From positions 1-64,000 of IMG/VR virus record IMGVR_UViG_3300035698_018317: a DNA stretch of 64,000 nt; one strand, 5' to 3'. The notes below the pieces were generated by a model that ran no database searches, was not told where the DNA came from, and was given only the letters and a program-made list of their open reading frames with translations. How positions within the stretch are numbered: the first letter of the stretch is position 1; every line of letters begins with the position of its first letter. This document shows positions 1 through 16,981 of this stretch, piece after piece. The position numbers and the translations under genes are program-made.

Positions 1-190
1 AACGAAATGCTTATCAGAGAATACAAAGGCGTCAAGTTCCCTTGCCCCGGTGTCTGCACAAATAAGTGGGATACCGAAGATTGGAAACAGTGGATTGAAA
101 ATCACAGAACCAATTAGTTATTAATTAACTTGTACATGATTGGTCAGTAAGTAAACGAACGAAACACTTTAGTAAAGGATTACCACCACC

Positions 191-664
191 ATGCCGAAGA
201 AACCCACCGAAACAACTGCACTCGAAGACATCCGAGCCAAAATCGAAGAAACCAAACAGGAAATGGCCGAAAGAGACCAAGTAATCGAGGCGGCGCAAGA
301 ACTGAACGAACTGAATAAGAAAGCCAATCAGCAAATCGACATGCTGAACCGACTCGCAATCTGCGCCGACGACACCGATGTTGACTGGTTGATGGTTTAC
401 AAAACGCAGTCCCACCGCTTCAACAAAGGCGGTACGCCGCTCGAAATTCTCCATCTGCTGATTGCGGGGAAAATCGAAACCAACGATAAAAACTGCCTGA
501 CCCCGGCAGATGTACGGGACCAGTTGATAGCACTGGGATACCACAAATACGCCGCTTTCAATAACAACCAAGGCTATGCGTTGGTCTACGGTGCCTTGCG
601 AAAAATCGGGGCAATGGCCGGAATGCAATGGATGAACGCCATCCGAGTCGGCATCTACATCTAA
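191..664 (+). CDS. Hypothetical protein (probable early gene)
   Basis: 157-aa ORF with AAAGGA SD upstream, followed by a 15-bp hairpin. Confidence 0.75.
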   Translation: MPKKPTETTALEDIRAKIEETKQEMAERDQVIEAAQELNELNKKANQQIDMLNRLAICADDTDVDWLMVYKTQSHRFNKGGTPLEILHLLIAGKIETNDKNCLTPADVRDQLIALGYHKYAAFNNNQGYALVYGALRKIGAMAGMQWMNAIRVGIYI

Positions 665-678
665 AACCCACTAACCAC

Positions 679-717
679 GATATCCCGTTAGGTGAAGCTC
701 ATACCTAACGGGATATC
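679..717 (+). terminator. 15-bp stem-loop after ORF 191-664
   Basis: GATATCCCGTTAGGT / ACCTAACGGGATATC, followed by TGTTT. Confidence 0.7.
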
Positions 718-935
718 TGTTTATATTCAACCCCCTGTACATGATAATCAATTGCTTATAATAAACTAATTCGTTAGCATGTACACAATGGAGCATGAAG
801 CAAAGTAACACAATACAACGAAACTGACGAAAAGAAAAGAAAAGTAATTAGTTAAGTTGTACATGATGAGATGTAAAGTAAAACAAACAATCGCCACACT
901 AACCAAAGACGCACAGAGAAGAGAAGGAAAAGCCC

Positions 936-1292
936 ATGATTACACCGGAATCAATCACGACCCTGACCGAAGCCGAAAAGCTCCAAGCAGATGCGCTCGA
1001 AGCACACTGCGACGGAATCATCGGACCCGCAAGCCAGTTGGACCCCGCCCAGAAAGATTACGTTGTCGATATGGGTGCTTACGCCAAGGCCGCCAAGAAA
1101 GCCGACAAGGACTTTGTCCTGTCCATCAAGGTCCGGGCGAACGTAGCCACACGCTACGAAGAGGCGAACTGGAAAGTCGCTTACGATGTCGCAACGTCCA
1201 AGCTGACTTTCACCATGCCCAAGGTGAAACGCACGTACAAGAAACGTGACCCCTCGCCCGCCGTAGTCGTACCGCCCGCCGAAGCTGCATAA
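936..1292 (+). CDS. Hypothetical protein ending -AEAA
   Basis: 118-aa ORF with AAGGAAA SD. Confidence 0.75.
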   Translation: MITPESITTLTEAEKLQADALEAHCDGIIGPASQLDPAQKDYVVDMGAYAKAAKKADKDFVLSIKVRANVATRYEEANWKVAYDVATSKLTFTMPKVKRTYKKRDPSPAVVVPPAEAA

Positions 1293-1338
1293 CTGCATAA
1301 CCGCATAACTCCGAAGCTGTAAAAATATTATCGGAACG

Positions 1339-1374
1339 GCCCCGCTGGAATTCCACCAGCGGGGCTTTGTTTTA
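1339..1374 (+). terminator. Intrinsic terminator
   Basis: GCCCCGCTGG / CCAGCGGGGC stem followed by TTTGTTTT. Confidence 0.75.
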
Positions 1375-1475
1375 TATTAAGTTATTAGTTAGCATGTACA
1401 TAAGAAGGTAGTTAAAAGGCAACGTGACGCAACACCCCCGACCGGATGGCCCTATATAACTGGGCACTGCGGGGG

Positions 1476-1519
1476 AAGCCCCGGCATCGTCCCCCGAAGG
1501 GATGCCGGGGCTTTGTTTT
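1476..1519 (+). terminator. Intrinsic terminator
   Basis: AAGCCCCGGCATC / GATGCCGGGGCTT stem followed by TGTTTT. Confidence 0.75.
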
Positions 1520-1577
1520 ATATTAAGTTATTAATTAGCATGTACATAAGTAAGTGTTCAGAATGAAAGGAACAACA

Positions 1578-2018
1578 ATGTCATTGAACGTGAATTTCGA
1601 CGAATGTAAACCAGCCTTTGAAAAATGCGACAAAGGCTACAAACCCGAAGGACCATTTGCCATGGTCAAACGTGACGAAAAGGGCAATATCACACATCGT
1701 CTTACCCATACATGTCGAGCCATCGTTGGAATGCTCATGGGCCTCGGCATGGGAAGAATCACAGGAAAGACGGTTAACGAGTTCACCGAAAGAAGCGAAC
1801 TCTGGCAGGATGTAATCGGACCATGTGGACCGGGATGGTGCGATGATGCAGAGGACGAAATCAAATACGTGCGAATAACCCCCGAAGATATCCGCAACCA
1901 TATCGGCTTGGCCTCCAACGTGTCCAAAGAGACAAATGCAGTCTTCTACAAGAAGCTGCGGGGCAACGTCAAGGACCGTCTGTGGAGACTGGCCCAGAAA
2001 GCCGCCCAAGCTGCATAA
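1578..2018 (+). CDS. Hypothetical protein ending -KAAQAA
   Basis: GAAAGGAACAACA-ATG at 1578 preferred over the ORF-track start at 1554. Confidence 0.75.
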   Translation: MSLNVNFDECKPAFEKCDKGYKPEGPFAMVKRDEKGNITHRLTHTCRAIVGMLMGLGMGRITGKTVNEFTERSELWQDVIGPCGPGWCDDAEDEIKYVRITPEDIRNHIGLASNVSKETNAVFYKKLRGNVKDRLWRLAQKAAQAA

Positions 2019-2064
2019 CGAAGGTCGATGAGGTGCGACCCGCCATGCAAACCAGCTCAACAAG

Positions 2065-2099
2065 AAGTCCCCGCCCCGGATGGGTGGGGACTTTCCTTT
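2065..2099 (+). terminator. Intrinsic terminator
   Basis: AAGTCCCCGCCC / GGGTGGGGACTT stem (one G-T pair) followed by TCCTTT. Confidence 0.7.
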
Positions 2100-2157
2100 A
2101 TATTAAGTTATTAGTTAGCATGTACATAAGTAAGTGTTCAGAACGAAAGGAAACGAC

Positions 2158-2343
2158 ATGGACGCAAATCAGGCAGCAGACAAACTGGCAAAAGCCGCTA
2201 GTAAAGACACCAAAGGCAAAGGCACCGACCATCTAGGCACCAGTATGAGAGACATGCTGAAGGCTGGTGTAAGCGACGAGGTGCTGCTGACAGGCATGAG
2301 TGTGGCATCAGGGTACTTATCCCCCGAGTCCGCCGTAGCCTAA
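2158..2343 (+). CDS. Small hypothetical protein
   Basis: GAAAGGAAACGAC-ATG; sits in a motif/hairpin cassette. Confidence 0.65.
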   Translation: MDANQAADKLAKAASKDTKGKGTDHLGTSMRDMLKAGVSDEVLLTGMSVASGYLSPESAVA

Positions 2344-2364
2344 CCCCCCGCCCCCTAACCCTTG

Positions 2365-2392
2365 GCCCCGCCCCCTCCGGGCGGGGTCTCTT
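2365..2392 (+). terminator. GC-rich hairpin/terminator
   Basis: GCCCCGCCC / GGGCGGGGT stem followed by CTCTT and the conserved motif. Confidence 0.55.
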
Positions 2393-2458
2393 ATATATTA
2401 AGGTATTAATTAGCATGTACAGGGATTACTTTACTAATTAGCATGTACAAGATAGTGC

Positions 2459-2659
2459 ATGAGCAAGTCGAAGACCCTCATCATTGCTGCTCTGCTGTTG
2501 GCCCTCCCTGCTGGTATCGTACTCGCAGGAACATGGCTGACAGTGCAACGGCACAAACGGAAAGGACTCACCGATGAACATCAAGCTCGAAGCAATGGAA
2601 CAGGCACGCAGACAGGAGCAGGAACGACTCACCACGAACTGCTCACCGTGTACTCCTGA
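2459..2659 (+). CDS. Small protein with N-terminal hydrophobic segment
   Basis: 66 aa, LIIAALLLALPAGIVLAG; directly downstream of two TGTACA motifs. Confidence 0.5.
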   Translation: MSKSKTLIIAALLLALPAGIVLAGTWLTVQRHKRKGLTDEHQARSNGTGTQTGAGTTHHELLTVYS

Positions 2660-2806
2660 CGAACACTGTGCCGAGTGCCCCGGTCAAGGGTAACACGACA
2701 ACATACCAGCATCCCCGACCCCGCAGCAATGCGGGGCGGGGTTGCTTAGTTACCTTGTACATGATGGGGTGTAAGATACACCACCATGAACGAAAGGAAA
2801 CACATC

Positions 2807-3100
2807 ATGGACGCATCGAGAGACGAGAGAGTGATAGCAATCAGAGCCGACAACCTCATCGGTACAGACTCATGCTCATTCATTGATGAATGCTTGAGTG
2901 ATGCTGACATCGTAGAGGAACTAGACAGGCGTAACATAGTGTCACCTGTCGATGCTATCAAGCACCTCATCGACGCACAGCATGGACAGTACGAGCGAGG
3001 GTTGGGTACACGAGCAGGCGACGATGATGACCCCATCCTCATTCAGTTCAACGACTGGGTAGTCAGACGTGACGCTCACCTACTCACACTACCCAGCTAA
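2807..3100 (+). CDS. Hypothetical protein
   Basis: GAAAGGAAACACATC-ATG at 2807; followed by a 14-bp hairpin. Confidence 0.65.
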   Translation: MDASRDERVIAIRADNLIGTDSCSFIDECLSDADIVEELDRRNIVSPVDAIKHLIDAQHGQYERGLGTRAGDDDDPILIQFNDWVVRRDAHLLTLPS

Positions 3101-3112
3101 CCCAGCCCAGCC

Positions 3113-3146
3113 CCCAGCCCTGCCCCGGTCAGGGGGCAGGGCTGGG
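3113..3146 (+). terminator. 14-bp GC hairpin closing the cassette region
   Basis: CCCAGCCCTGCCCC / GGGGCAGGGCTGGG; no clear U-tract. Confidence 0.5.
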
Positions 3147-3547
3147 TGACGTAGTGACGTACCATGGTATGTTGCTACCTATATATGTAAAGGTATTGAT
3201 ACGATGCACCCGAAAAAAAACCACGCCACACTAAAACATAATTTAAAATTAAAAAATTATTTTCAAAAAAGTATGGCACCCACCCCCCTACCCCCCCCTC
3301 CCCCACAATAACGCACCTCTGTCTTAGTTTTGGGCCGTGGGGAAATTCGCATACATGTTACATAATTGATAACATATCAACTTTTGGGGTTTTGTATAGG
3401 GGTTAAAAAATATACACCGAATAAGGTCCAAAAAATCGGCGGGGAGTTTTGCCATATCTACATAACTTTTTTGTCAGAAATTGTTGTTTTTCCGTATAGT
3501 GTTGATATAATCCACTAATCAACTGTTAACCCAAAAGGAATAAGATT

Positions 3548-6641: not shown

Positions 6642-6652
6642 ACTGTTATATA

Positions 6653-7100
6653 GGTTATTAACTTGGTATAATACTGTGGGCGAGATATTTTTTGGAGATG
6701 GGACTCTTATATGTTATGGAATTGAAAGAAAGTATGCGAGAGTGGATGGATGTGGACATGGCTCAACATGAGTTAGCTAAGTGTTTAGGTGTTTTTGGTC
6801 TTCATACGGAAATGCGGCATTATAAAAGTGTTTATTGGTGTAACAATGATTGGGGTAATGAGTTATATGAAATTTTATTAAAATTGGCATCATTAGGTTT
6901 GCTTGAGCATCGTGAAGAGCCGGATATTCAATTTAGGTGGAACCCTAGATGTTCGCCACCTGATGATGACGGGTTGATAAGTTAATAACTTGGTATAATA
7001 CTGGGGGCGAGAAATTTTTTGATGGTGGGAGCCGCTGGAAAGTTATTAACTTGATATACTACTGGGAGCGAGATATTTTTTTGCGATGGGAGCCGCTGGG
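6653..7100 (+). repeat. Three copies of a ~50-nt motif GTTA(T/A)TAACTTG(G/A)TATA(A/C)TACTG.GG.GCGAGA.ATTTTTT
   Basis: Copies start at about 6654, 6981 and 7042; the last two share GGGAGCCGCTGG. Confidence 0.75.
6716..6985 (+). CDS. Hypothetical protein
   Basis: ORF lying between motif copies 1 and 2. Confidence 0.55.
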   Translation: MELKESMREWMDVDMAQHELAKCLGVFGLHTEMRHYKSVYWCNNDWGNELYEILLKLASLGLLEHREEPDIQFRWNPRCSPPDDDGLIS

Positions 7101-7868: not shown

Positions 7869-8078
7869 TTACGACACTTTGTTGATAGCATCTTTCCACG
7901 ACGCAAACCACAGAGCATCTTCAAACGCTTCTTCCCAACCATTACTGCGGCTCCCATCGGGAAAAAACATCTCGCTATAATACTTATTCCCTTGGACTAA
8001 GACGTACCTAGGATATTCTTCTGGACCTACACGTTTAATTATTTTTTGTTTAGCAAATTCTGGGTTGTATTCATTCAT
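7869..8078 (-). CDS. Hypothetical protein, paralog of 8071-8307
   Basis: Shared KRVGPE..PRYVL.QG.KYY and AF.DALWF segments. Confidence 0.65.
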   Translation of the reverse strand: MNEYNPEFAKQKIIKRVGPEEYPRYVLVQGNKYYSEMFFPDGSRSNGWEEAFEDALWFASWKDAINKVS

Positions 8079-8307
8079 TTTTGTTTTTCTTAAAGAAGTT
8101 TCGATTAAAGTATGATTCTCCACCAGCTAGCGTTTCAAACCACAATGCGTCTGGAAACGCTCCAAACTCACCATCGGCACAATAATACTTACCTCCTTGA
8201 GCCAAGACGTACCTTGGAAATTTTTCTGGACCTACACGTTTAATAGTGATATCAAAATTATCACGAATCCATTCTTTCCATAATTTCAAACTCTTATATT
8301 CTTTCAT
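8071..8307 (-). CDS. Hypothetical protein, paralog of 7869-8078
   Basis: GAAAGG SD; starts just past the end of CRISPR array 1. Confidence 0.65.
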   Translation of the reverse strand: MKEYKSLKLWKEWIRDNFDITIKRVGPEKFPRYVLAQGGKYYCADGEFGAFPDALWFETLAGGESYFNRNFFKKNKNE

Positions 8308-8333
8308 TTTATTACCTTTCAAAATATCCTAGT

Positions 8334-8973
8334 CAAACACCCCTACGCATGTAGGGAAAACCTCGGACGACGCTGTTTATGGCGGACCCTCCGTAGGGAC
8401 ACCCCTACGCATGTAGGGAAAACGACCTGCTTGAACGCTTGGAAATTTCTGGTACAGGGACACCCCTACGCATGTAGGGAAAACAAATAAAACAATCAGG
8501 AGACAAAGAGTTGGCTAAGGGACACCCCTACGCATGTAGGGAAAACGCTCTGTAAGCTGTCGTAAGGAAGACTCAGTGGGGACACCCCTACGCATGTAGG
8601 GAAAACTTAGAACTTTCTATGTTGCCGTTAGAACCCTCAATGGGGACACCCCTACGCATGTAGGGAACACGCTGCTGATTTGGCAACATTCAGAGCAGAT
8701 GAAGGGACACCCCTACGTTGTAGGGAAAAATTAAACAATCGTTTTTTCAACAGAAAACCCATTGGTACACCCCTACGCATATGTAGGGAAAACATAAAAA
8801 GAGGAGAAATAAAACGAGAACACTGGGTACACCCCTACGAATGTAGGGAACCTATCGTTGCGATACTCAGACGTGGTATTCCTTGGGGACACCCCTACGC
8901 ATGGTAGGGAAAATGGCCAAGTGGTTCACCGTGGCCAACCATGAACCGGGAACACCCTTACATGTAGGGATAC
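8334..8973 (-). CRISPR. CRISPR array 1: 11 repeats, 10 spacers, type I-E
   Basis: 28-nt repeat GTTTTCCCTACATGCGTAGGGGTGTCCC (minus sense). Plus-strand repeat starts at 8334, 8396, 8457, 8519, 8579, 8643, 8704, 8764, 8826, 8886 and 8948; spacers 32-36 nt. Confidence 0.97.
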
Positions 8974-8975
8974 AA

Positions 8976-9545
8976 TCATCGGCTTAACAGCAACATTCCA
9001 AATCCAAAAGATTTACCTTTGCCTATACCTTTTTTAATGGTTTGAGAGAAATCTTCTGTAGAAGTTATTTTTAACTTACCTTTGAAAACAACTTTGTTAT
9101 GTGTTTGTTTACCTATTTTGTCTTTGAATTGTATTGATGATGGTTGTCCTATATTAAGACCACATATAGTAAACCCATGCTGTTTACCTTTTCTCACAAT
9201 CCAACGCACTAAATCTTTTTCTTCAGTAATAGCTCTATATTTTTTATTTTGTTTAACAACAGGATTTGCTGTTAATACAAAATTAAATATTTTTCCGTCC
9301 TTTACACCGACATCAAATTGTTTAACATCTGCGTGGAACTTTTTATCTGACCAATTAGGTTTTGTTTCAGACTGTACCAAAACAGAGTCATCACAAACAA
9401 CATATAGGACATTATGGTTCTGTCTAGCCATTCCTTTTTCATCGGGGAATCCAGACATTACGGTTCTATGTATTTGATAATTTGATGCAATAAGTCTATA
9501 ACATTCTGGGGTTGGTTTAAATTTTAATTTTGATAAGAACATCAT
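8976..9545 (-). CDS. cas6e: Type I-E crRNA endonuclease Cas6e
   Basis: YQIHRTV, VLVQS, F.LTANP and C-terminal G-loop GIGKGKSFGFG. Confidence 0.93.
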   Translation of the reverse strand: MMFLSKLKFKPTPECYRLIASNYQIHRTVMSGFPDEKGMARQNHNVLYVVCDDSVLVQSETKPNWSDKKFHADVKQFDVGVKDGKIFNFVLTANPVVKQNKKYRAITEEKDLVRWIVRKGKQHGFTICGLNIGQPSSIQFKDKIGKQTHNKVVFKGKLKITSTEDFSQTIKKGIGKGKSFGFGMLLLSR

Positions 9546-10162
9546 TCTCCTTTACCAAAGTCAACATGAACAGATTGGATGTTTCTAGCCCCATATACTT
9601 TATCTGATATAGGAACATCCTCAACTCGTTCGCTGTCTATTGTTTTTTCATTAGTTTCTACAATAAATCTAACAACATTTTTTGCAGGTAGTTGTTTAAG
9701 AGCATCAAATGGGTTTTCATCATTTGTGACTTTAGAGATAATTGGTGTCGTAATAGGACATGCCAACCTTCCCATATAAAGATGATAACATGGATGGTTT
9801 AAGCCTTCAGTTATTTCATCCACGAGTATGTCATCGCCTGTCAATGCGACAGTGAATTGACTATCGGAAGAGAGGTAATATCTCCATGTTTGAACACTTT
9901 GTTTCCCTTTTCCAATCAATTTAACGAAATTACCAGCATTTTGGTAGTCGCATTCTTTTACACCTTGATTATCAACTCGCACCGCCATTCGAAGGCTAAG
10001 AAGTTCCTTAGCCTTCGAATGGTTAGAACGGATTCCCATAGCGGATTTAATTAAGCCTAGTATTCCGCTATAAGTTGGTTCATTGCGAGTTTCTCGATAA
10101 ACATGCTTGCTGCTATCGCCCCAACTCTGCATACCTTTAAGTGTTAATATAATGGTTTTCAT
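9542..10162 (-). CDS. cas5e: Type I-E Cas5
   Basis: MQSWG, EPTYSGILGLI and LYMGRLACP; start moved to 10162 (AAGGGA SD). Confidence 0.93.
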   Translation of the reverse strand: MKTIILTLKGMQSWGDSSKHVYRETRNEPTYSGILGLIKSAMGIRSNHSKAKELLSLRMAVRVDNQGVKECDYQNAGNFVKLIGKGKQSVQTWRYYLSSDSQFTVALTGDDILVDEITEGLNHPCYHLYMGRLACPITTPIISKVTNDENPFDALKQLPAKNVVRFIVETNEKTIDSERVEDVPISDKVYGARNIQSVHVDFGKGE

Positions 10163-10166
10163 TTTT

Positions 10167-11267
10167 TTATCCCTTAAGAGTATCCACAACTTTTTCGCAT
10201 ACTTCTTGTAAGGACATCTTGCCGTCAATATCCTTTAAGGAGCATACAAACGTGTGAGAAGGTTTATTTCCAAAAGTTTCTTCTACTGCTTGTCGATATT
10301 CGAAGAAGTTACGGATAGCCACATCAGTAAGGCTTTCTTTATCTTTATGATTGGGAACTACTGGAGTCTCAAAAGCGTTCACATCGCTATTTGGTTGAGT
10401 ATCCAAAATGTCCACAACCACAAGGGCAGGCACAACATTATTGGCAAATGTATTAGCTTTTCCTTTTGGTACGTCCATAGCGAATGCTGAAATGAATTCA
10501 GCACATGCCTCTGCTGTAAGATTGGCGTCATCAAGATTTTCCATAAGTTTATCAACGCAAATTGAAGCATATTGATAATAGCAGGAAGAATTAAACGACA
10601 ATGAGCCAAGGTGACCAGCCCCAGTGGTATCCTCTTCCCCAGAGTCAATCTTAAGGTCATCTATTGCTGTAAAATAATCAAATTCTTCAGCAAGGGCATT
10701 CACACCCATTGCATGGGCGACCTGTACAGCGGCATAAACTTCATGGGTTTTGACGGTAGCTTGCATTCTTCCGAACATGGCAACATCGACAGTGATGCCA
10801 ATAGGTTTCCCATGAAGTATTTTCTTGATATTCTTGATATCAAAATCGTCTTCCTTCATTGCCACAACAACTCTGTCAATAATGCTATCAATTTCTTTAT
10901 CAGACGTAAAAATCAAACAGGATGTAAGGTTTTCTTTTCCTTTTTTACTATTTCTCTTCTTGTCGAAAACTGTGTTAACGATAGCATTGGCAATATTAAC
11001 ACGAGTTTTTTCATCTTCTACAAAATCCAACTTGTTGATGATTCGTTTAAGAATCATCTGTGTTCGAATTCCGTGATAAGCATGAACTTTTTCAGCGTCC
11101 ATGTTCTCATGCCAGAATTCACGAACCATTCTCTTAAGACATTGGCTAGAAATTCTGGAGCGGCGGGAGCCACCAAATACACAATCTTTTTGTTCTCCAC
11201 TATCATCCGCATTAGGTCTAGACACGGGGTAGTTCTTCAATAATCCAATCTTTACAAATTTTGACAT
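10167..11267 (-). CDS. cas7e: Type I-E backbone subunit Cas7
   Basis: NADDSGEQKDCVFGG.RRSRISSQCLKR, DVAMFGRM, VQVAHA and DYFTAIDD. Confidence 0.95.
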   Translation of the reverse strand: MSKFVKIGLLKNYPVSRPNADDSGEQKDCVFGGSRRSRISSQCLKRMVREFWHENMDAEKVHAYHGIRTQMILKRIINKLDFVEDEKTRVNIANAIVNTVFDKKRNSKKGKENLTSCLIFTSDKEIDSIIDRVVVAMKEDDFDIKNIKKILHGKPIGITVDVAMFGRMQATVKTHEVYAAVQVAHAMGVNALAEEFDYFTAIDDLKIDSGEEDTTGAGHLGSLSFNSSCYYQYASICVDKLMENLDDANLTAEACAEFISAFAMDVPKGKANTFANNVVPALVVVDILDTQPNSDVNAFETPVVPNHKDKESLTDVAIRNFFEYRQAVEETFGNKPSHTFVCSLKDIDGKMSLQEVCEKVVDTLKG

Positions 11268-11284
11268 TTTTTTAATTCCTTCTG

Positions 11285-11815
11285 TTATGCCATTTCTGGC
11301 GAGTTAATTTTTTCTTTTTTTGATTCTACTTTTTTTACTGGTTGTTCCCAAAAATCTTTTGAGAATTTGTTTTGAACCCACATATCATCTTCTTTCCACC
11401 ATGTTAATCCTTGTAACAAATCAGCCCAATTAATCGGAATTCTTTTAGCTGCTGATAATCGTATCAGTGTTCCAAGATGTTGGAATACTGGGATTTCTTC
11501 TGTAGCATCTAGGAAAGAAAGAAATTTCCTATTCATTCCTTCTTCGCTATATTCCTTAATTAATGGTTTAATACTTTTACCAAATGATTTTGTGTCTGTA
11601 TGACGTGGGTTGATTGCGAATAAGCGTGCTGTATGAATGAAACAGAGATTACTCCAAGATTCATTTTGTGTTGGAAGGTATGGGTAAATATACCTACCAA
11701 TTTGAAACAGCTTAGTTGGGTTACTTTTCTTAAATTTTGACAATATAGCTGGGCCTCTTTTGCTTTTTGTCAATTTAACTAAATGGTCTATAAAATTGTC
11801 TATTCTTTTATTCAT
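11285..11815 (-). CDS. cse2: Type I-E small subunit Cas11 (Cse2)
   Basis: Lies between cas8e and cas7; helical, with INWADLL and KDFW motifs. Confidence 0.88.
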   Translation of the reverse strand: MNKRIDNFIDHLVKLTKSKRGPAILSKFKKSNPTKLFQIGRYIYPYLPTQNESWSNLCFIHTARLFAINPRHTDTKSFGKSIKPLIKEYSEEGMNRKFLSFLDATEEIPVFQHLGTLIRLSAAKRIPINWADLLQGLTWWKEDDMWVQNKFSKDFWEQPVKKVESKKEKINSPEMA

Positions 11816-13232
11816 TTTTCTTTCCTTTATTAAACAGGATGATTTCGAAACTTTTTAAATTTCCTTTTTGGTACAAGTATTCTAACACATTTTTTCGGCT
11901 CCCACTCATTAACTTTCTTGTTTCGTTCATGAATAATTTGTGGGCCACTTCTCTTATTTTTTTCACAAAAGATATTTTTGCTTCTACTGTCTTTTGAGAC
12001 ATGAATTCTAGAAATAAGGTGTTAGCTTCGCTCCAGAATAAAACTTTAACTTGTTCTGGACTTTCTAAAGTAAATTGTTTATAGAGACGATAAACAAAAC
12101 TTCTCAGGTGAACTCCTACACGATTAGCTTCTTCAACAACTTGACATATAATTTCCTGAATATCATCATTTTTGATACAGTCGGTTGAAAGAGGTAGTAC
12201 ATCTTCTGAAATCATTTTATATTTGGTTAATTTATCATCCATATAAAATCCATATGATTGATATCCAAAATCAATCATATCATCGAAGATGTCTAAGTTT
12301 TCATTGTTTGCAAAAACATACTCACCGTCTGCAACTCCAGCCTTGACAGAAATCACAAAGGATTTGAAATTATTCCATAAATGTTCAGCATGGGAAAAAC
12401 GGAGAGGTTTATACCCATCTTTGGTGTTTTTGTATACTACGAATGGGTCACGTAATCCTTCAATCGGTTCATTACCCTTATCCCAATACATATAGGAAAA
12501 AGTTCCATTGTCATTAGGAAGTAATTTGATGCTTCTGGAGCAACGAGTCAAATATTGCATATATCCACGGACTTTGTTATCATTTAATACCGGGGACTCA
12601 TCCTCCCAAACGGGACTATCTTCTTCTGTCTGCGGAATGTTAAGATTTTCATCTAAAGGATGGGCATTAAGCATAAATGTTTGGAATAAATTCTTTCCAG
12701 TAAGAAGAACGGGCATTCCACGTTGGCTAGACGCATGAAAAGTAGAACGATGTTCGCCAAGTCCTTTGCCAGTATTTAAGGCAAAAGATTGAAGTGTCAT
12801 CAATTGAATAGCTACATCTTCAGCTTGAACAGACGTAGTTTTGATAAAATTTCTTGATGACCATGATGCATCGGCATCTGTTAAAAAATTAAGTCTATTA
12901 ACAGATTCCTTTTTCTTTGTTTGAAGTTTGGGGTCTTGTAGGAAAGGCTTTTTGGTGTCTAGTAAATCAAAGCAAAAAGAGTTCAAATAATTGGTGGTTG
13001 ATTTATCAAAACAACCTTTTTCCCAAAGTGCTTTCCACTCTTCCTCATTGTTCAATCCGTAAGCTCTATAAAGAACGGGCAGGAACATCCTAGTGAAGGC
13101 CAAATTTTGAAGAGGCTGAGAAAATGCCGTAGATTCAATTTCGTGAGCATGTTCAAAGACGGAGATAAGGTTATGGCTTCCTTGTAACGTTGAAATCCAA
13201 TTTTCAGTTTTTAAGTCGTATGATGTCGTCAT
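11808..13232 (-). CDS. cas8e: Type I-E large subunit Cas8e (Cse1)
   Basis: YDL..ENWI, PLQNLAF.R, EEEW..LWEKG and FDL....PFLQ; GAAAGGAA SD gives a start at 13232. Confidence 0.9.
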   Translation of the reverse strand: MTTSYDLKTENWISTLQGSHNLISVFEHAHEIESTAFSQPLQNLAFTRMFLPVLYRAYGLNNEEEWKALWEKGCFDKSTTNYLNSFCFDLLDTKKPFLQDPKLQTKKKESVNRLNFLTDADASWSSRNFIKTTSVQAEDVAIQLMTLQSFALNTGKGLGEHRSTFHASSQRGMPVLLTGKNLFQTFMLNAHPLDENLNIPQTEEDSPVWEDESPVLNDNKVRGYMQYLTRCSRSIKLLPNDNGTFSYMYWDKGNEPIEGLRDPFVVYKNTKDGYKPLRFSHAEHLWNNFKSFVISVKAGVADGEYVFANNENLDIFDDMIDFGYQSYGFYMDDKLTKYKMISEDVLPLSTDCIKNDDIQEIICQVVEEANRVGVHLRSFVYRLYKQFTLESPEQVKVLFWSEANTLFLEFMSQKTVEAKISFVKKIREVAHKLFMNETRKLMSGSRKNVLEYLYQKGNLKSFEIILFNKGKKNE

Positions 13233-13265
13233 GTTATTTCCTTTCTTAATTATCATCATGTCAAG

Positions 13266-13294
13266 AATATACAGTATGATAAAATAAAAAGCAA
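13266..13294 (-). promoter_or_regulatory. Sigma70-like promoter for the cascade operon
   Basis: Minus strand TTGCTT-17 nt-TATATT between array 2 and cas8e. Confidence 0.5.
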
Positions 13295-13341
13295 GAGAAA
13301 TCCCATATTGTTTTTATTTGAAAAACATATTTTTTAGAAAC

Positions 13342-13740
13342 TTAACACCCCTACGAATGTAGGGAAAACAAAAAAAAGAAGAAGGAATTTCTCCCACGAT
13401 AAGGGACACCCCTACGTTTGTAGGGAAAACTTCTCTAAAAATTTACGAGCATCAGCAACTAGCGGGACACCCCTACGCATGTAGGGAAAACCAGCCGCAG
13501 AGAGATTCCAGAGCGTTCAGTTAGGGGCACCCCTACGCATGTAGGGAAAACGCTAGGTCAGTTCTTCGGGGCCACGTCGCACGAAAGGAACACCCCTACG
13601 TATGTAGGGAAAACCTTTCTGAGTTGCAGATTCGGTCGTGACAACGTTAGGGACACCCCTACGCATGTAGGGAAAACAAGCAATAGATAAAGCATTGAGC
13701 GAAGCTCAATGAGGGACACCCCTACGCATGTAGGGAAAAC
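13342..13740 (-). CRISPR. CRISPR array 2: 7 repeats, 6 spacers, between cas3 and cas8e
   Basis: Same repeat as array 1. Plus-strand starts at 13342, 13403, 13464, 13524, 13587, 13650 and 13713; spacers 32-35 nt. Confidence 0.97.
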
Positions 13741-13773
13741 TATAACATTTAGTAGTAGAGTAATATGTTGTGT

Positions 13774-16368
13774 TTAGTATTTTTTTAGTCTTTTGAGTTG
13801 TAGTCCATTTTCTAAATCATATTTGGCTTCGAAATTTGCTCGTTTTAAATAATTATTTTCATCTAGAATCAAAAGTCCGCAATATCTAAGTGGTGTGCGT
13901 TCCCACTCTTCTCGTATTGTTTTTTGGAAATAATTAAAGTAAGGGTTTCCAATAATTGGACATTGACTTTTTTGTAATAGTTCTATTTCTTTTTTATTTG
14001 GTATTTTTGTTAAATCGGGTGCAAGTATTTTCCTTTTTGGGTCTAAGTACCACCTTTTATCCCCTTGTTTATAGAATAAAATGACCACTTTCATTGCTGA
14101 AACAATATTTCTAGTGGATAGTTTATTCTCTTTTTCTTGTTTCTTAGAAGGATTTATGTTTAAATCATTATCTTCTTTTAAAACTATACTATTTGCTAAG
14201 TTTTCTTCTTTAACTTCTTTTTTTTCTAATTTGTCATGAGCTTTATTATAAGTTTCTTGTTCTTTTTTTGTAAGTTTTTCAAATGGTTTATACACATATT
14301 CAATTAATTCTTCAACCATATCTGGGATTTTTAATTGGGTCTTATTATGCAGTATATCATAAGTTCTTTGCATAGTATAAGAATCATAGACATAATTTTC
14401 TAGCACACCATCTTCATCGAATTCATAAACGACCCCTATTCTTGGAGAACGAAGCCCTAATGGTCGATTTATGATAAAGCGATGATTCCTGCCGCCTCGT
14501 TGTAACAATAAGTCAATTGGGCATAGAAATGTTAACATATAATCGAAATCTACATTAAGACTTTGTTCTATTATCTGAGTTCCTACTAAAATGGATATGA
14601 AAGGTCTTTTAGTACCATCTTTTCCATAATCACTAAGAACTTCTTGTGTTAATTTATCTTTATCTTCATCTCTAAATCGTGCATGAATTAATTTACGATG
14701 AATATCTGGGACCATTTTAGCTAGTAATTTATTTATTCTTTGTGCTTGTTTCACTGTGTTACAGACAATAGCTAGACATCCTCCATTTTTTATTTTTTTC
14801 AGAACATGTCCCAATAATTCATAATATTGTTGAACTACAATACCATTTTTTATTTTAAAATTAGGGTTTATATAAAAATGGTCTAATTTAATTGTTTTAG
14901 TTTTTTCAGGAGGTAATTTTTTAACAATTGTTTTATTTCCAGAAACTACACATACCCTAGGGTATGGAACGTCTTCTTTTAATTCGCCACCATAAGCTTC
15001 AACAAATTCTTTTTTCATTTGTTTTGTTAAGGTGGCAGATAGCATAATGACTGAACATCTTAGATTTTTAAGTTCTTTTAACAATCTTTTAATTAAGACT
15101 TGCATATAAGTGTCATAAGCGTGTATTTCATCAAAAATTACTACTTTATTTACTAGTCCATATAAACGGAGGAAGAAGTATTTTACAGGGACGACACCAA
15201 ACAGAGCTTGGTCTATTGTGCTATCACCAAACTGTGAGAAAAACTTACGCTTTCCACTATTGAACCATTCAAATGGGGAGACAGTATCTTTTGTGTCTAT
15301 TTTTTTATACCATTCATGAGCATTAGCATTGCCATGTCCTATTTGGAAATTTGCCTCTCCATCTGTTATATTTTCTAAATAGTTAACTGTTCTATCTACC
15401 ATGGCATTTGTAGTTGCTTGAGTTGGCATAAGAATATGCATCCCACGATGTCCAACATTTGTCATTAACTTATCTGAGGCATAGAAGCCCACTTCTGTCT
15501 TTCCCTGCCCCGTACTCATTTCGACAATCAAAAGAGATGGTTCTTTTAACTTATCTGCAATTTCTATAATTGTTTTTTGTGATTCATATGGAGTTATATT
15601 CGGGAACATTTCCTCAAAGCTTAAATCTTTAATAGGACATAAATCCATTTTGATATTATCTAATGCAAATTTAGCCTTTTGAGGAAGGTCTTTTACATAT
15701 TCTTGCCATGTTGTTTCTTCCCCTGCAAAGGGGAAGAAATTTTCATCGGAAGCAATCCAATCGGAGAGAGAAAGTAATCCTGAAAAGAAGAAATAAAAGT
15801 GTTGAGGCAACTTTGCTTTCTTCCATATTTTTGACGGAATTGGGAACACCTTTTGAATCACATCTATTGCTAATTCTTGTTGTTCTTTCCACTTATCATC
15901 TTTTAAACATTTAAAGAAAAATCTTCCATCTTGTTTTCTAGGTTTTGGGAGAACTGAGTATCGCCCATGATGACCACCAAGAAGGGAACAAAGTGTATCA
16001 GGCAATTTTCCATTCATTATTTGTTTAGAAAATACTTCATGTCGGAAATGTGGTTTGTTCTTTCCATCTAGACCAAAAAAGTTATACCCATCATCTTGTA
16101 ACGGCTTATAAGCTTCAGATTGAATAGCAAAATTTGGTGTTATTTTACCAATATCATGATATGGAACTATTCCAACTACAAATTGTATTGCTTCATCTTT
16201 AGTTAATCCCAATGAATTAGCCATATATTCTAATTCTTCATCAGGCAGTATCCTAAGAAGAATTTCTTTAGCAATAAAACCCGAATCTAACATATGAAAT
16301 AAAGCAGGATGTGTTTTCTTTGTTGCTCTGTCAAATTTACCCCAAATTTTATAATCTATTTTATTCAT
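13774..16368 (-). CDS. cas3: Cas3 HD nuclease-helicase
   Basis: HDIGK, HHG, SDWIASD, STGQGKTE, DEIH, SATL and QRGGR.HR; start at 16368 overlaps the upstream stop (TGATG). Confidence 0.95.
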   Translation of the reverse strand: MNKIDYKIWGKFDRATKKTHPALFHMLDSGFIAKEILLRILPDEELEYMANSLGLTKDEAIQFVVGIVPYHDIGKITPNFAIQSEAYKPLQDDGYNFFGLDGKNKPHFRHEVFSKQIMNGKLPDTLCSLLGGHHGRYSVLPKPRKQDGRFFFKCLKDDKWKEQQELAIDVIQKVFPIPSKIWKKAKLPQHFYFFFSGLLSLSDWIASDENFFPFAGEETTWQEYVKDLPQKAKFALDNIKMDLCPIKDLSFEEMFPNITPYESQKTIIEIADKLKEPSLLIVEMSTGQGKTEVGFYASDKLMTNVGHRGMHILMPTQATTNAMVDRTVNYLENITDGEANFQIGHGNANAHEWYKKIDTKDTVSPFEWFNSGKRKFFSQFGDSTIDQALFGVVPVKYFFLRLYGLVNKVVIFDEIHAYDTYMQVLIKRLLKELKNLRCSVIMLSATLTKQMKKEFVEAYGGELKEDVPYPRVCVVSGNKTIVKKLPPEKTKTIKLDHFYINPNFKIKNGIVVQQYYELLGHVLKKIKNGGCLAIVCNTVKQAQRINKLLAKMVPDIHRKLIHARFRDEDKDKLTQEVLSDYGKDGTKRPFISILVGTQIIEQSLNVDFDYMLTFLCPIDLLLQRGGRNHRFIINRPLGLRSPRIGVVYEFDEDGVLENYVYDSYTMQRTYDILHNKTQLKIPDMVEELIEYVYKPFEKLTKKEQETYNKAHDKLEKKEVKEENLANSIVLKEDNDLNINPSKKQEKENKLSTRNIVSAMKVVILFYKQGDKRWYLDPKRKILAPDLTKIPNKKEIELLQKSQCPIIGNPYFNYFQKTIREEWERTPLRYCGLLILDENNYLKRANFEAKYDLENGLQLKRLKKY

Positions 16369-16685
16369 CACCCACCAATGCCCATGTTGTTCTTGTAAGG
16401 CCATATGATACGGCCAGATTGTAAGATATCCCACACCATTTTTTTCCATACTTTTCTTATATGGATATGAAATTCTTCAGATGTTACTAATTTTTTTTCA
16501 ATAAGTTGGAATCCCAATTCAGAATCATCAACACCCATTCTATTAAGAGCTTCCCACAAATATCCTACTATTTTATCAACTGTTCTATATTTCTTTCTAA
16601 TATCTTTATCATGCATTGCGACTTCTGCATGTTCGAATATTAGTTCGGCTGCTTCGCACACACGTTCTGATAATTCTGTACACAT
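16368..16685 (-). CDS. Small helical protein whose stop overlaps the cas3 start; paralog of 16691-16981
   Basis: Starts MCTELSERVCEAAELIFEH. Confidence 0.75.
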   Translation of the reverse strand: MCTELSERVCEAAELIFEHAEVAMHDKDIRKKYRTVDKIVGYLWEALNRMGVDDSELGFQLIEKKLVTSEEFHIHIRKVWKKMVWDILQSGRIIWPYKNNMGIGG

Positions 16686-16690
16686 TTATT

Positions 16691-16981
16691 TTACCTTTTA
16701 ATAGCGCCAGTTCGGATAATTGTCCACACCATTTGTTTCCACACAGTCTTTAAAGATTTTGCTCTATCACGGAAGTGTATCTCTGTCACAAGATTATCAT
16801 TAATGAGTTGCATCCCAAATTCGGTATCGTCTATACCAATGTTTAGAAGAACATCCCACAAATATTCTTCTACTTTAAGCTTTGTTTTGTAATAATGATT
16901 TGCATTATGTAAGGCGGCATCTCTATGTTCAAACACTAACTCAGTTGCTTCAAATACACGTTCTGATAATTCTGTACACAT
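16691..16981 (-). CDS. Small helical protein, paralog of 16368-16685
   Basis: Starts MCTELSERVFEATELVFEH; AAAGGAA SD. Confidence 0.75.
   Translation of the reverse strand: MCTELSERVFEATELVFEHRDAALHNANHYYKTKLKVEEYLWDVLLNIGIDDTEFGMQLINDNLVTEIHFRDRAKSLKTVWKQMVWTIIRTGAIKR

What the first reader, a model, noticed from the sequence alone, without database searches (positions are those of the whole stretch)
8334..16368. Phage-borne complete type I-E interference system with no adaptation module and a split-array layout
Seen: cas3-[array 2]-cas8e-cse2-cas7-cas5-cas6e-[array 1], all with recognisable catalytic motifs, and no cas1/cas2 in the window. Known: huge phages often carry interference-only CRISPR systems aimed at hosts or competing elements. 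Having Cas3 plus the full Cascade, one array inside the operon and one fused to cas6e, is the notable arrangement.
Basis: partly seen in the sequence, partly recalled or inferred. Interest (0 to 1): 0.7.

Follow-up and report, generated by a model that had tools for sequence, protein, structure and literature searches.

The report
Phage type I-E CRISPR without adaptation genes
A very large salt-lake phage carries a complete, apparently working type I-E CRISPR weapon (Cas3 plus Cascade and two small arrays) but lacks the genes for acquiring new spacers; its nearest relative has those genes exactly where this phage has an array, so they were probably lost by recombination between repeats.

Summary
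On the minus strand of 8333-16368 lie cas3, a 7-repeat array, cas8e, cse2, cas7, cas5, cas6e and an 11-repeat array, giving 16 spacers. All six proteins pass the curated type I-E family cut-offs. The Cas3 HD and DExH motifs and the Cas6e histidine are intact.

The record is a 225-kb phage fragment with large terminase, major head protein, baseplate wedge and 11 tRNA genes. It comes from salt-lake metagenomes. No cas1 or cas2 occurs anywhere in the 225 kb, but CheckV rates the record only 44% complete.

The new point is comparative. The closest relative is 87% identical in DNA across the Cascade operon and also has an array before cas8e. It has cas1-cas2 after three degenerate repeats downstream of cas6e. 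Those repeats, and one spacer, are orthologous to the degenerate start of this phage's array 1, and homology ends inside a repeat. More distant relatives have arrays on both sides of cas1-cas2. Loss of cas1-cas2 by repeat-to-repeat recombination is therefore the best reading.

No spacer target was found. Adaptation-less CRISPR systems in huge phages are already known, so this is a variant of a known kind and of moderate interest.

The parts
13774..16368 (-). cas3 (HD nuclease fused to an SF2 helicase), 864 aa from the ATG at 16368. The open frame extends to 16449.
   Evidence: Scores are TIGR01587 215 bits (cut-off 102), TIGR01596 55 bits (cut-off 43) and PF18019 110.9 bits. It aligns to T. 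fusca and T. terrenum Cas3 structures. The H..HD..HH..D motifs, GxGKT, DEIH and the arginine finger are conserved. The start was set from the TGATG overlap and from the alignment to L001 Cas3.
13341..13740 (-). CRISPR array 2: 7 repeats of 29 nt and 6 spacers of 31-34 nt. [quoted passage not shown] The last repeat is degenerate at its 3' end.
   Evidence: An array at the same position occurs in relative L003.
13233..13340 (-). Conserved intergenic stretch ahead of cas8e. It contains a promoter-like TTGCTT-N17-TATATT (13294-13266) and a ribosome-binding site.
   Evidence: The core is about 95% identical to L003, against 87% for the locus overall. Promoter function is inferred only. The consensus scan found no more sites than chance in this region.
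11808..13232 (-). cas8e/cse1, the Cascade large subunit. The open frame extends to 13259.
   Evidence: TIGR02547 86.9 bits (cut-off 70.05) and PF09481 176.7 bits.
11285..11815 (-). cse2/cas11, the small subunit.
   Evidence: TIGR02548 38.5 bits (cut-off 28.5) and PF09485 55.7 bits.
10167..11267 (-). cas7e (cse4/casC), the backbone subunit.
   Evidence: TIGR01869 244 bits (cut-off 178) and PF09344 297 bits. It belongs to a divergent clade with 100/100 support.
9542..10162 (-). cas5e (casD), 206 aa.
   Evidence: TIGR01868 102 bits (cut-off 69). The start was set by the L003 orthologue.
8976..9545 (-). cas6e (cse3/casE), the pre-crRNA endoribonuclease.
   Evidence: TIGR01907 89.6 bits (cut-off 45.2) and PF08798 125.9 bits. 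The catalytic His aligns with T. thermophilus Cse3 His26 (YQIHRT against YEMHRT), and the glycine-rich loop is conserved.
8703..8974 (-). Array 1, proximal part: 5 degenerate repeats with loop indels and stem or handle changes, and 4 spacers between them. It starts 1 nt after the cas6e stop.
   Evidence: Repeat 1, and repeat 4-spacer 4-repeat 5, are orthologous to the three degenerate repeats between cas6e and cas1 in L003.
8333..8702 (-). Array 1, distal part: 6 near-perfect repeats and 6 spacers (spacers 5-10). The terminal repeat is degenerate at its 3' end. The next gene starts about 25 nt further on.
   Evidence: The sequence is identical in four sequencing runs and two JGI contigs.
16368..16981 (-). 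Two paralogous small ORFs (96 and 105 aa). The second has a stop that overlaps the cas3 start. Whether they belong to the system is unknown.
   Evidence: (repeats D7 and D10). No family or fold match was found. They are not conserved beside cas3 in relatives.

Best explanation
This is a type I-E CRISPR-Cas interference system, without an adaptation module, carried by a huge lytic-type phage from a salt lake.

How it probably works (inferred from the family, not shown here):
[quoted passage not shown] One unit would be cas3 plus array 2. A second unit would start at a conserved promoter-like element and cover cas8e to cas6e plus array 1.
- Cas6e cuts each repeat after its 7-bp hairpin. This gives crRNAs with an 8-nt GUGUCCCU 5' handle.
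- Cas8e, Cse2, Cas7, Cas5 and Cas6e assemble on the crRNA into Cascade, which finds matching DNA.
- Cas3 is recruited to nick and shred that DNA.

The 16 spacers are a fixed set of targets. They were most probably taken from DNA with a higher GC content than the phage: competing mobile elements, or the host or its defence islands.

The adaptation genes were most probably lost. An ancestor had cas6e-[short array]-cas1-cas2-[array]. Recombination between a repeat on each side removed cas1-cas2 and fused the two arrays into the present array 1.
For: Shown here:
- All six interference proteins exceed the curated type I-E cut-offs and stand in the canonical order.
- The Cas3 HD and helicase motifs and the Cas6e His are intact.
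- The repeat has the I-E design of a 21-nt hairpin part plus an 8-nt handle. It folds at -9.7 kcal/mol. Its stem covaries across 8 relatives: 100% of cells are paired and 3 of 7 pairs show compensatory changes.
- The Cascade genes are under purifying selection against the closest relative, with dN/dS of 0.11-0.23.
- The locus is identical in independent assemblies and runs from 2017 to 2019.
- The record is a phage.
- There is no cas1 or cas2 in the 225 kb.

Evidence for loss of cas1-cas2:
- L003 is 87% identical over 4.4 kb and has the same array before cas8e. It has cas6e-3 degenerate repeats-cas1-cas2.
- The window's repeat 4-spacer 4-repeat 5 matches L003's last two repeats and the spacer between them at 88.6%.
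- Window repeat 5 is a hybrid. It has the odd TTTTT start and an A(T)AC loop like L003's last repeat, but a canonical GTGTCCCT 3' end. Beyond it the two sequences are unrelated.
- In the clade, L014 has array-cas1-cas2-array, L011 has cas1-cas2-array, and L010 has cas6e-cas1-cas2. cas1-cas2 after cas6e is therefore the ancestral state, and flanking arrays do exist.

Spacer GC is 44.2% against 36.8% for the genome (P about 0.001), and no spacer matches the phage itself.
Against: - No protospacer was found for any spacer. Targets, PAM and activity are therefore unknown.
- Five of the 11 repeats in array 1 are degenerate and may not be processed.
- No leader or promoter was verified. The promoter scan gave no more sites than chance.
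- No expression data were obtained.
- Cas3 scores below the full-length equivalog cut-off (PRK09694, 345 bits against 569). Pfam does not detect the Cas3 C-terminal domain PF18395, although most cellular relatives have it.
- The direction of the cas1-cas2 event (loss here or gain in L003) rests on parsimony. L003 ends at cas2, so its downstream array was not seen.
- The record is 44% complete.
Confidence: 0.65

Rival explanations
1. The system is still adaptive. cas1-cas2 lie in the unsequenced part of the genome, or Cas1-Cas2 are supplied in trans by the host's own I-E system or by a co-infecting relative with compatible repeats.
For: The record is only 44% complete. Relatives with cas1-cas2 and near-identical repeats exist. 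The spacer content of the array before cas8e differs completely between the window and L003. Use of host I-E Cas1-Cas2 in trans by an adaptation-less plasmid system is documented for type IV-A3 (reviewed in PMC11656645).
Against: The canonical cas1-cas2 site is occupied by an array. Both arrays lack a leader, starting 1 nt and 33 nt after stop codons. The arrays are identical in every run and assembly examined, 2017-2019. The repeat was not found in one genome per species of 185,579 prokaryote species, nor in IMG/VR. The L007-type relative sits in marine runs, not in the salt-lake runs.
Confidence: 0.2
2. The locus is a decaying relic that no longer interferes with anything.
For: There are five degenerate repeats. 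No spacer has a detectable target. One spacer is inherited and already mutated relative to L003. cas1-cas2 have been lost.
Against: All six ORFs are intact over 7.4 kb in an AT-rich genome, where stop codons would arise quickly. Catalytic residues are conserved. dN/dS is 0.11-0.23. Thirteen repeats are clean or nearly so.
Confidence: 0.1
3. The system binds targets mainly to silence genes (host or competitor) rather than to destroy DNA, as proposed for some huge-phage systems.
For: Huge-phage spacers that target host transcription and translation genes, and nuclease-dead effectors, have been reported (PMC7162821).
Against: Cas3 is present with a full HD site and full helicase motifs. It lies in the same gene block and its start is coupled to the upstream ORF.
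Confidence: 0.04
4. The CRISPR locus is not on the phage. The contig would be a chimera with host or plasmid DNA near its end.
For: The locus lies 8-16 kb from the contig end. Bases 1-3200 have 48% GC against 36% elsewhere.
Against: The GC content of the locus (32-39%) matches the phage. It sits in one co-directional gene block that continues into phage genes, namely the Dda-like helicase at 25 kb and baseplate genes at 44 kb. An independent JGI contig spans 10996-6704 identically. Cas7 belongs to a clade found only on AT-rich contigs, those with flanking sequence being full of small ORFs.
Confidence: 0.02

Closest known systems
Canonical type I-E CRISPR-Cas (E. coli K-12, Thermus thermophilus, Thermobifida fusca)
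   Same: It has the same six interference genes in the same order (cas3-cas8e-cse2-cas7-cas5-cas6e). The repeat is 29 nt with a hairpin followed by an 8-nt handle. Spacers are about 32 nt. The Cas3 HD-helicase fusion and the Cas6e catalytic His are present.
   Different: There is no cas1-cas2 and no AT-rich leader. One array lies between cas3 and cas8e and the other abuts the cas6e stop codon. The proteins are only about 30-38% identical to cellular homologues. It is carried by a phage.
Adaptation-less CRISPR-Cas systems of huge phages (Al-Shayeb et al. 2020, PMC7162821; review PMC11656645)
   Same: The genome is a phage of more than 200 kb. It lacks Cas1, Cas2 and Cas4. The array is compact and the effector keeps its catalytic residues.
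   Different: The type I example described in that paper is an I-C variant with another helicase in place of Cas3 and no Cas6. Here the full I-E set, including Cas3 and Cas6e, is kept. A close relative that still holds cas1-cas2 shows where and how they were lost.
Vibrio phage ICP1 type I-F system (Seed et al. 2013, as summarised in PMC11656645 and PMC9040626)
   Same: It is a phage-encoded class 1 system with a Cas3-type nuclease-helicase and two arrays, used against another genetic element.
   Different: ICP1 is subtype I-F, keeps cas1 and acquires spacers, and sits in a genome of about 125 kb. Its target (PLE) is known; here the target is unknown.
Relative L003 (Logan contig from SRR14477300, 5.8 kb)
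   Same: It is 87% identical in DNA across cas8e to cas6e. It has the same array position before cas8e, the same conserved promoter-like stretch and orthologous degenerate repeats after cas6e.
   Different: It has cas1 (268 aa) and cas2 (86 aa) after the third degenerate repeat. Its repeat stem is CCCCAC/GTGGGG rather than CCCTAC/GTAGGG, a compensatory change. Its spacers differ. Its replicon is unknown.

Membership tests
Type I-E CRISPR-Cas | Signature large subunit Cas8e/Cse1 | tested here: met
   TIGR02547 86.9 bits against a cut-off of 70.05; PF09481 176.7 bits.
Type I-E CRISPR-Cas | Small subunit Cse2/Cas11 as a separate gene | tested here: met
   TIGR02548 38.5 bits against 28.5; PF09485 55.7 bits.
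Type I-E CRISPR-Cas | Cas7e, Cas5e and Cas6e of the I-E families, in the order cas7-cas5-cas6e | tested here: met
   TIGR01869 244 against 178; TIGR01868 102 against 69; TIGR01907 89.6 against 45.2. The Cas6e His is conserved.
Type I-E CRISPR-Cas | Cas3 with a fused HD nuclease and SF2 helicase, and intact motifs | tested here: met
   The core and HD domain models are above their cut-offs and the motifs were seen in structure-based alignments. The full-length equivalog PRK09694 is below its cut-off (345 against 569). The C-terminal domain PF18395 is not detected.
Type I-E CRISPR-Cas | Repeat of about 29 nt with a stem-loop and an 8-nt 5' handle; spacers of about 32-33 nt | tested here: met
   The 29-nt repeat has a 7-bp stem, a 4-nt loop and a 7-8 nt tail. 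Spacers are 31-35 nt. The stem covaries in relatives.
Type I-E CRISPR-Cas | cas1e-cas2e adaptation module after cas6e (typical of complete loci, not a signature of the subtype) | tested here: not met
   Absent from the 225-kb record. An array occupies the site. Present in relatives L003, L010, L011 and L014.
Type I-E CRISPR-Cas | AT-rich leader with a promoter and integration signals ahead of the first repeat | tested here: not met
   The first repeats begin 1 nt after the cas6e stop and 33 nt after the cas3 stop.
Type I-E CRISPR-Cas | crRNA-guided, PAM-dependent DNA interference | not testable with these tools
   No protospacer was found and there are no expression or activity data.
Huge-phage adaptation-less CRISPR-Cas | Encoded on a phage genome of more than 200 kb | tested here: met
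   Virus record of 225,284 bp. Large terminase, major head protein and RNA ligase. Baseplate wedge and Dda-like helicase. Eleven tRNA genes.
Huge-phage adaptation-less CRISPR-Cas | Spacers aimed at competing phages or at host genes | tested here: inconclusive
   No match in the phage's own genome, GenBank phages, PLSDB plasmids, relatives' loci, IMG/VR (4 spacers) or GTDB genomes (1 spacer). Spacer GC is higher than the phage's.

The most novel reading that the evidence does not exclude
In this divergent type I-E lineage, found on AT-rich contigs that look phage-like where flanking sequence is available, short leaderless arrays act as punctuation inside the cas operon. They occur before cas8e, before cse2, and on both sides of cas1-cas2. 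Two consequences would follow. First, crRNAs would be cut by Cas6e straight out of the cas mRNA, which ties guide supply to cas expression and splits the message. Second, the adaptation genes would sit between direct repeats as a cassette that recombination can delete, so lineages could switch from an adaptive to a hard-wired arsenal. This phage and L003 would be an after-and-before pair.
Probability: 0.3. Interest if true: 0.6.

Novelty: new variant of a known kind. Interest (0 to 1): 0.42.

Why it matters
Huge phages with CRISPR systems that lack adaptation genes are known, but how they come to lack them is usually only guessed. Here a close relative still has cas1-cas2, and the breakpoint falls inside a repeat. 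That gives a concrete and testable route: deletion between the arrays on either side.

The locus also offers a compact, complete Cascade-Cas3 set from an AT-rich, probably cold saline setting. Its arrays appear to need no leader, which is of interest for understanding how guides are expressed and for minimal type I tools.

Finding the targets of its 16 spacers would show whether the phage fights its host, the host's defence islands or rival phages.

Tried and rejected
Spacer targets. All of these searches were negative:
- blastn-short of the 16 spacers against the 225-kb record.
- Both arrays against GenBank phages. The only hit was one 27-nt match at E 0.7, treated as chance.
- Both arrays against PLSDB plasmids.
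- 25-mers of four spacers against IMG/VR.
- A 25-mer of one spacer against GTDB genomes.
- Window spacers against relatives' loci, and relatives' spacers against this genome. The only match was the orthologous spacer 4.

Laying Logan contigs of runs X1-X4 on the locus showed identical arrays. It also gave one 34-nt AT-rich piece over spacer 3 of array 1 (8789-8822). That piece is too low in complexity to count as a protospacer. One contig joined the two arrays repeat to repeat; I read this as an assembly effect.

Looking for a host array or related phage arrays: the degenerate repeat pattern was found in neither IMG/VR nor GTDB genomes.

Relatives in IMG/VR: none was found with Cas7 alone, the Cas7 clade alignment or the Cas1 clade alignment.

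Extending L003: exact-sequence look-ups of its Cas1, Cas2 and Cas8e found only the same 5.8-kb contig. A Cas3 search found no near relative of more than 46% identity. The replicon of L003 and the sequence after its cas2 therefore remain unknown.

Flanking small ORFs: no match in Pfam, NCBIfam, PHROGs or the ESM Atlas, and no homologues beside the cas loci of relatives.

Other negatives:
- The promoter and terminator consensus scan gave no more sites than chance.
- There were no Rfam hits and no tRNA genes in the window.


Full report
**What is there**

The window is the first 64 kb of an IMG/VR virus record of 225,284 bp. The record is linear and CheckV rates it 44% complete.

On the minus strand, between 16368 and 8333, lies an uninterrupted block running in one direction:
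- cas3;
- a 7-repeat array;
- cas8e, cse2, cas7, cas5 and cas6e;
- an 11-repeat array.

Every protein passes the curated NCBIfam cut-off of its type I-E family and the matching Pfam model. Comparison with orthologues refined three start codons:
- cas3 starts at 16368, in a TGATG overlap with the upstream ORF.
- cas8e starts at about 13232.
- cas5 starts at 10162.

**Are the parts intact?**

Cas3 aligns over nearly its whole length with the solved type I-E Cas3 structures. It keeps the HD-site histidines and aspartates, the Walker A GxGKT, the DEIH box and the arginine finger. Cas6e keeps the catalytic histidine and the glycine-rich loop of T. thermophilus Cse3.

The repeat GTTTTCCCTACATGCGTAGGGGTGTCCCT has the I-E design of a hairpin followed by an 8-nt handle. 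This fixes the direction of transcription as that of the cas genes. It folds at -9.7 kcal/mol. Across eight related loci its stem is always paired, and three of its seven pairs change on both sides.

Against the closest relative, the five Cascade genes show dN/dS of 0.11-0.23.

One caveat concerns Cas3. Pfam does not detect the Cas3 C-terminal domain, and the full-length equivalog model is below its cut-off.

**Is it a phage, and is the layout real?**

The record encodes:
- a large terminase;
- a major head protein (E 2.4e-81);
- a baseplate wedge protein, a Dda-like helicase and a CCA-adding enzyme;
- an RNA ligase;
- 11 tRNA genes.

The locus has the phage's GC content. Two JGI metagenome contigs are 100% identical over 11430-8903 and 10996-6704. 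Logan contigs of four salt-lake runs carry the same arrays letter for letter. A chimeric or artefactual layout is therefore very unlikely.

**Adaptation genes**

Neither Cas1 (PF01867) nor either Cas2 family (PF09707, PF09827) is found in the 225 kb. A tblastn with the Cas1 and Cas2 of the closest relative also finds nothing. No further copy of the repeat exists in the record.

Both arrays lack a leader. Array 1 starts 1 nt after the cas6e stop and array 2 starts 33 nt after the cas3 stop. Because the record is a fragment, a distant cas1-cas2 cannot be excluded.

**Relatives and the origin of the layout**

The phage's Cas7 is only 35-38% identical to named cellular type I-E Cas7 proteins. With five metagenomic proteins it forms a clade with 100/100 support. 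Members of this clade lie on AT-rich contigs (mostly 30-37% GC; two fragments are 45% and 53%). Where flanking sequence is available, it is full of small unannotated ORFs.

The closest relative, L003, is 87% identical in DNA across the whole Cascade operon. It also has an array directly before cas8e, followed by the same conserved promoter-like stretch. After cas6e, however, it has three degenerate repeats and then cas1 and cas2.

The comparison with the window is specific:
- The window's repeat 1 corresponds to L003's first degenerate repeat.
- The window's repeat 4-spacer 4-repeat 5 corresponds to L003's last two repeats and the spacer between them (88.6% identity).
- Window repeat 5 has the unusual 5' end and loop of L003's last repeat but a canonical 3' end.
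- Beyond that point L003 runs into cas1, while the window runs into six clean repeat-spacer units.

Other clade members show the likely ancestral states:
- L010 has cas6e-cas1-cas2.
- L011 has cas1-cas2 followed at once by an array.
- L014 has array-cas1-cas2-array.

Two further members, L001 and L018, also lack cas1-cas2 after cas6e.

The simplest account is that cas1-cas2 once lay between two arrays and were deleted by recombination between repeats, which fused the arrays into array 1. This is an inference. L003 ends at cas2, and attempts to extend it failed.

**Targets**

No spacer matches any of the following:
- the phage itself;
- GenBank phages;
- PLSDB plasmids;
- relatives' loci;
- IMG/VR, with four spacers tried;
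- GTDB genomes, with one spacer tried.

The repeat was not found in any GTDB species genome or in IMG/VR, so no host array with the same repeat is known.

The spacers are richer in GC than the phage: 44.2% against 36.8%, P about 0.001. This fits a foreign source other than close kin.

A third variant of the locus, L007, is 91% identical to the window and 86% to L003. It occurs in marine rather than salt-lake runs.

**Mechanism and rivals**

I take the system to be a working, hard-wired Cascade-Cas3 weapon. Its guides would be cut by Cas6e out of transcripts shared with the cas genes. The steps after transcription are inferred from the family and are not shown here.

The main rival is that spacers are still acquired, either through cas1-cas2 in the missing part of the genome or in trans. 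The identical arrays across samples, the lack of leaders and the absence of a matching host repeat speak against it, but do not exclude it.

Decay, a silencing-only role and a non-phage location are less likely, for the reasons given under Rival explanations.

**Comparison with what is known**

Huge phages that carry CRISPR systems without Cas1, Cas2 and Cas4 were described in 2020 (PMC7162821) and have been reviewed since (PMC11656645). The kind is therefore known.

Three things differ here:
- the full type I-E set, including Cas3 and Cas6e;
- co-directional, leaderless arrays placed inside the operon, a feature shared by relatives;
- a natural relative that still has the adaptation genes and so marks the breakpoint.

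I rate it a new variant of a known kind, of moderate interest.

Noticed in passing
window 1-3200: This stretch has 48% GC against about 36% elsewhere. It holds seven copies of a 19-nt motif (TTAGTTAGCATGTACATAA; 0.08 expected by chance). Most copies stand ahead of a small plus-strand ORF that ends with a GC-rich hairpin and a T run. It looks like a cassette of small genes with their own promoters and terminators (an early or host-takeover module), or else foreign DNA at the contig end.
   Followed up: partly
window 6652-7099: There are three copies of a 60-nt repeat containing TTAACTTGGTATAATACTG, which resembles an extended -10 promoter. An independent JGI contig ends at the first copy.
   Followed up: partly
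window 16368-16981 and 7869-8322: Two pairs of paralogous small genes bracket the CRISPR locus: 96 and 105 aa just upstream of cas3, and 83 and 84 aa just downstream of array 1. None has a family, fold or neighbourhood match.
   Followed up: partly
L014:230-2488; L004:1-150 with L016/L017: In relatives, arrays sit at other places among the cas genes. L014 has a 9-repeat array, then cas1-cas2, then an array of at least 11 repeats. L004 has an array directly before cse2, while contigs from the same samples (L016, L017) end just after cas3-cas8e. L004, L016 and L017 share the same 3' end sequence.
   Followed up: partly
L003:4743-5546 and relatives P0122-P0124: The Cas1 proteins of this clade are short, at 260-268 aa against about 300-335 aa for most type I-E Cas1 hits. 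In L011 and L014 the arrays after cas2 start within about 15-45 nt of the cas2 stop. Even the adaptive members of the clade therefore seem to have very short leaders.
   Followed up: no
G000 171868-180351 (outside the window): There is a cluster of 11 tRNA genes (Ser x5, Leu x3, Tyr x2, Phe).
   Followed up: no
window 13693-13711: Spacer 1 of array 2 contains an 8-bp inverted repeat followed by a T-rich run. The scan flags it as terminator-like. The terminal repeat of array 2 followed by a T-rich tract is also flagged.
   Followed up: no
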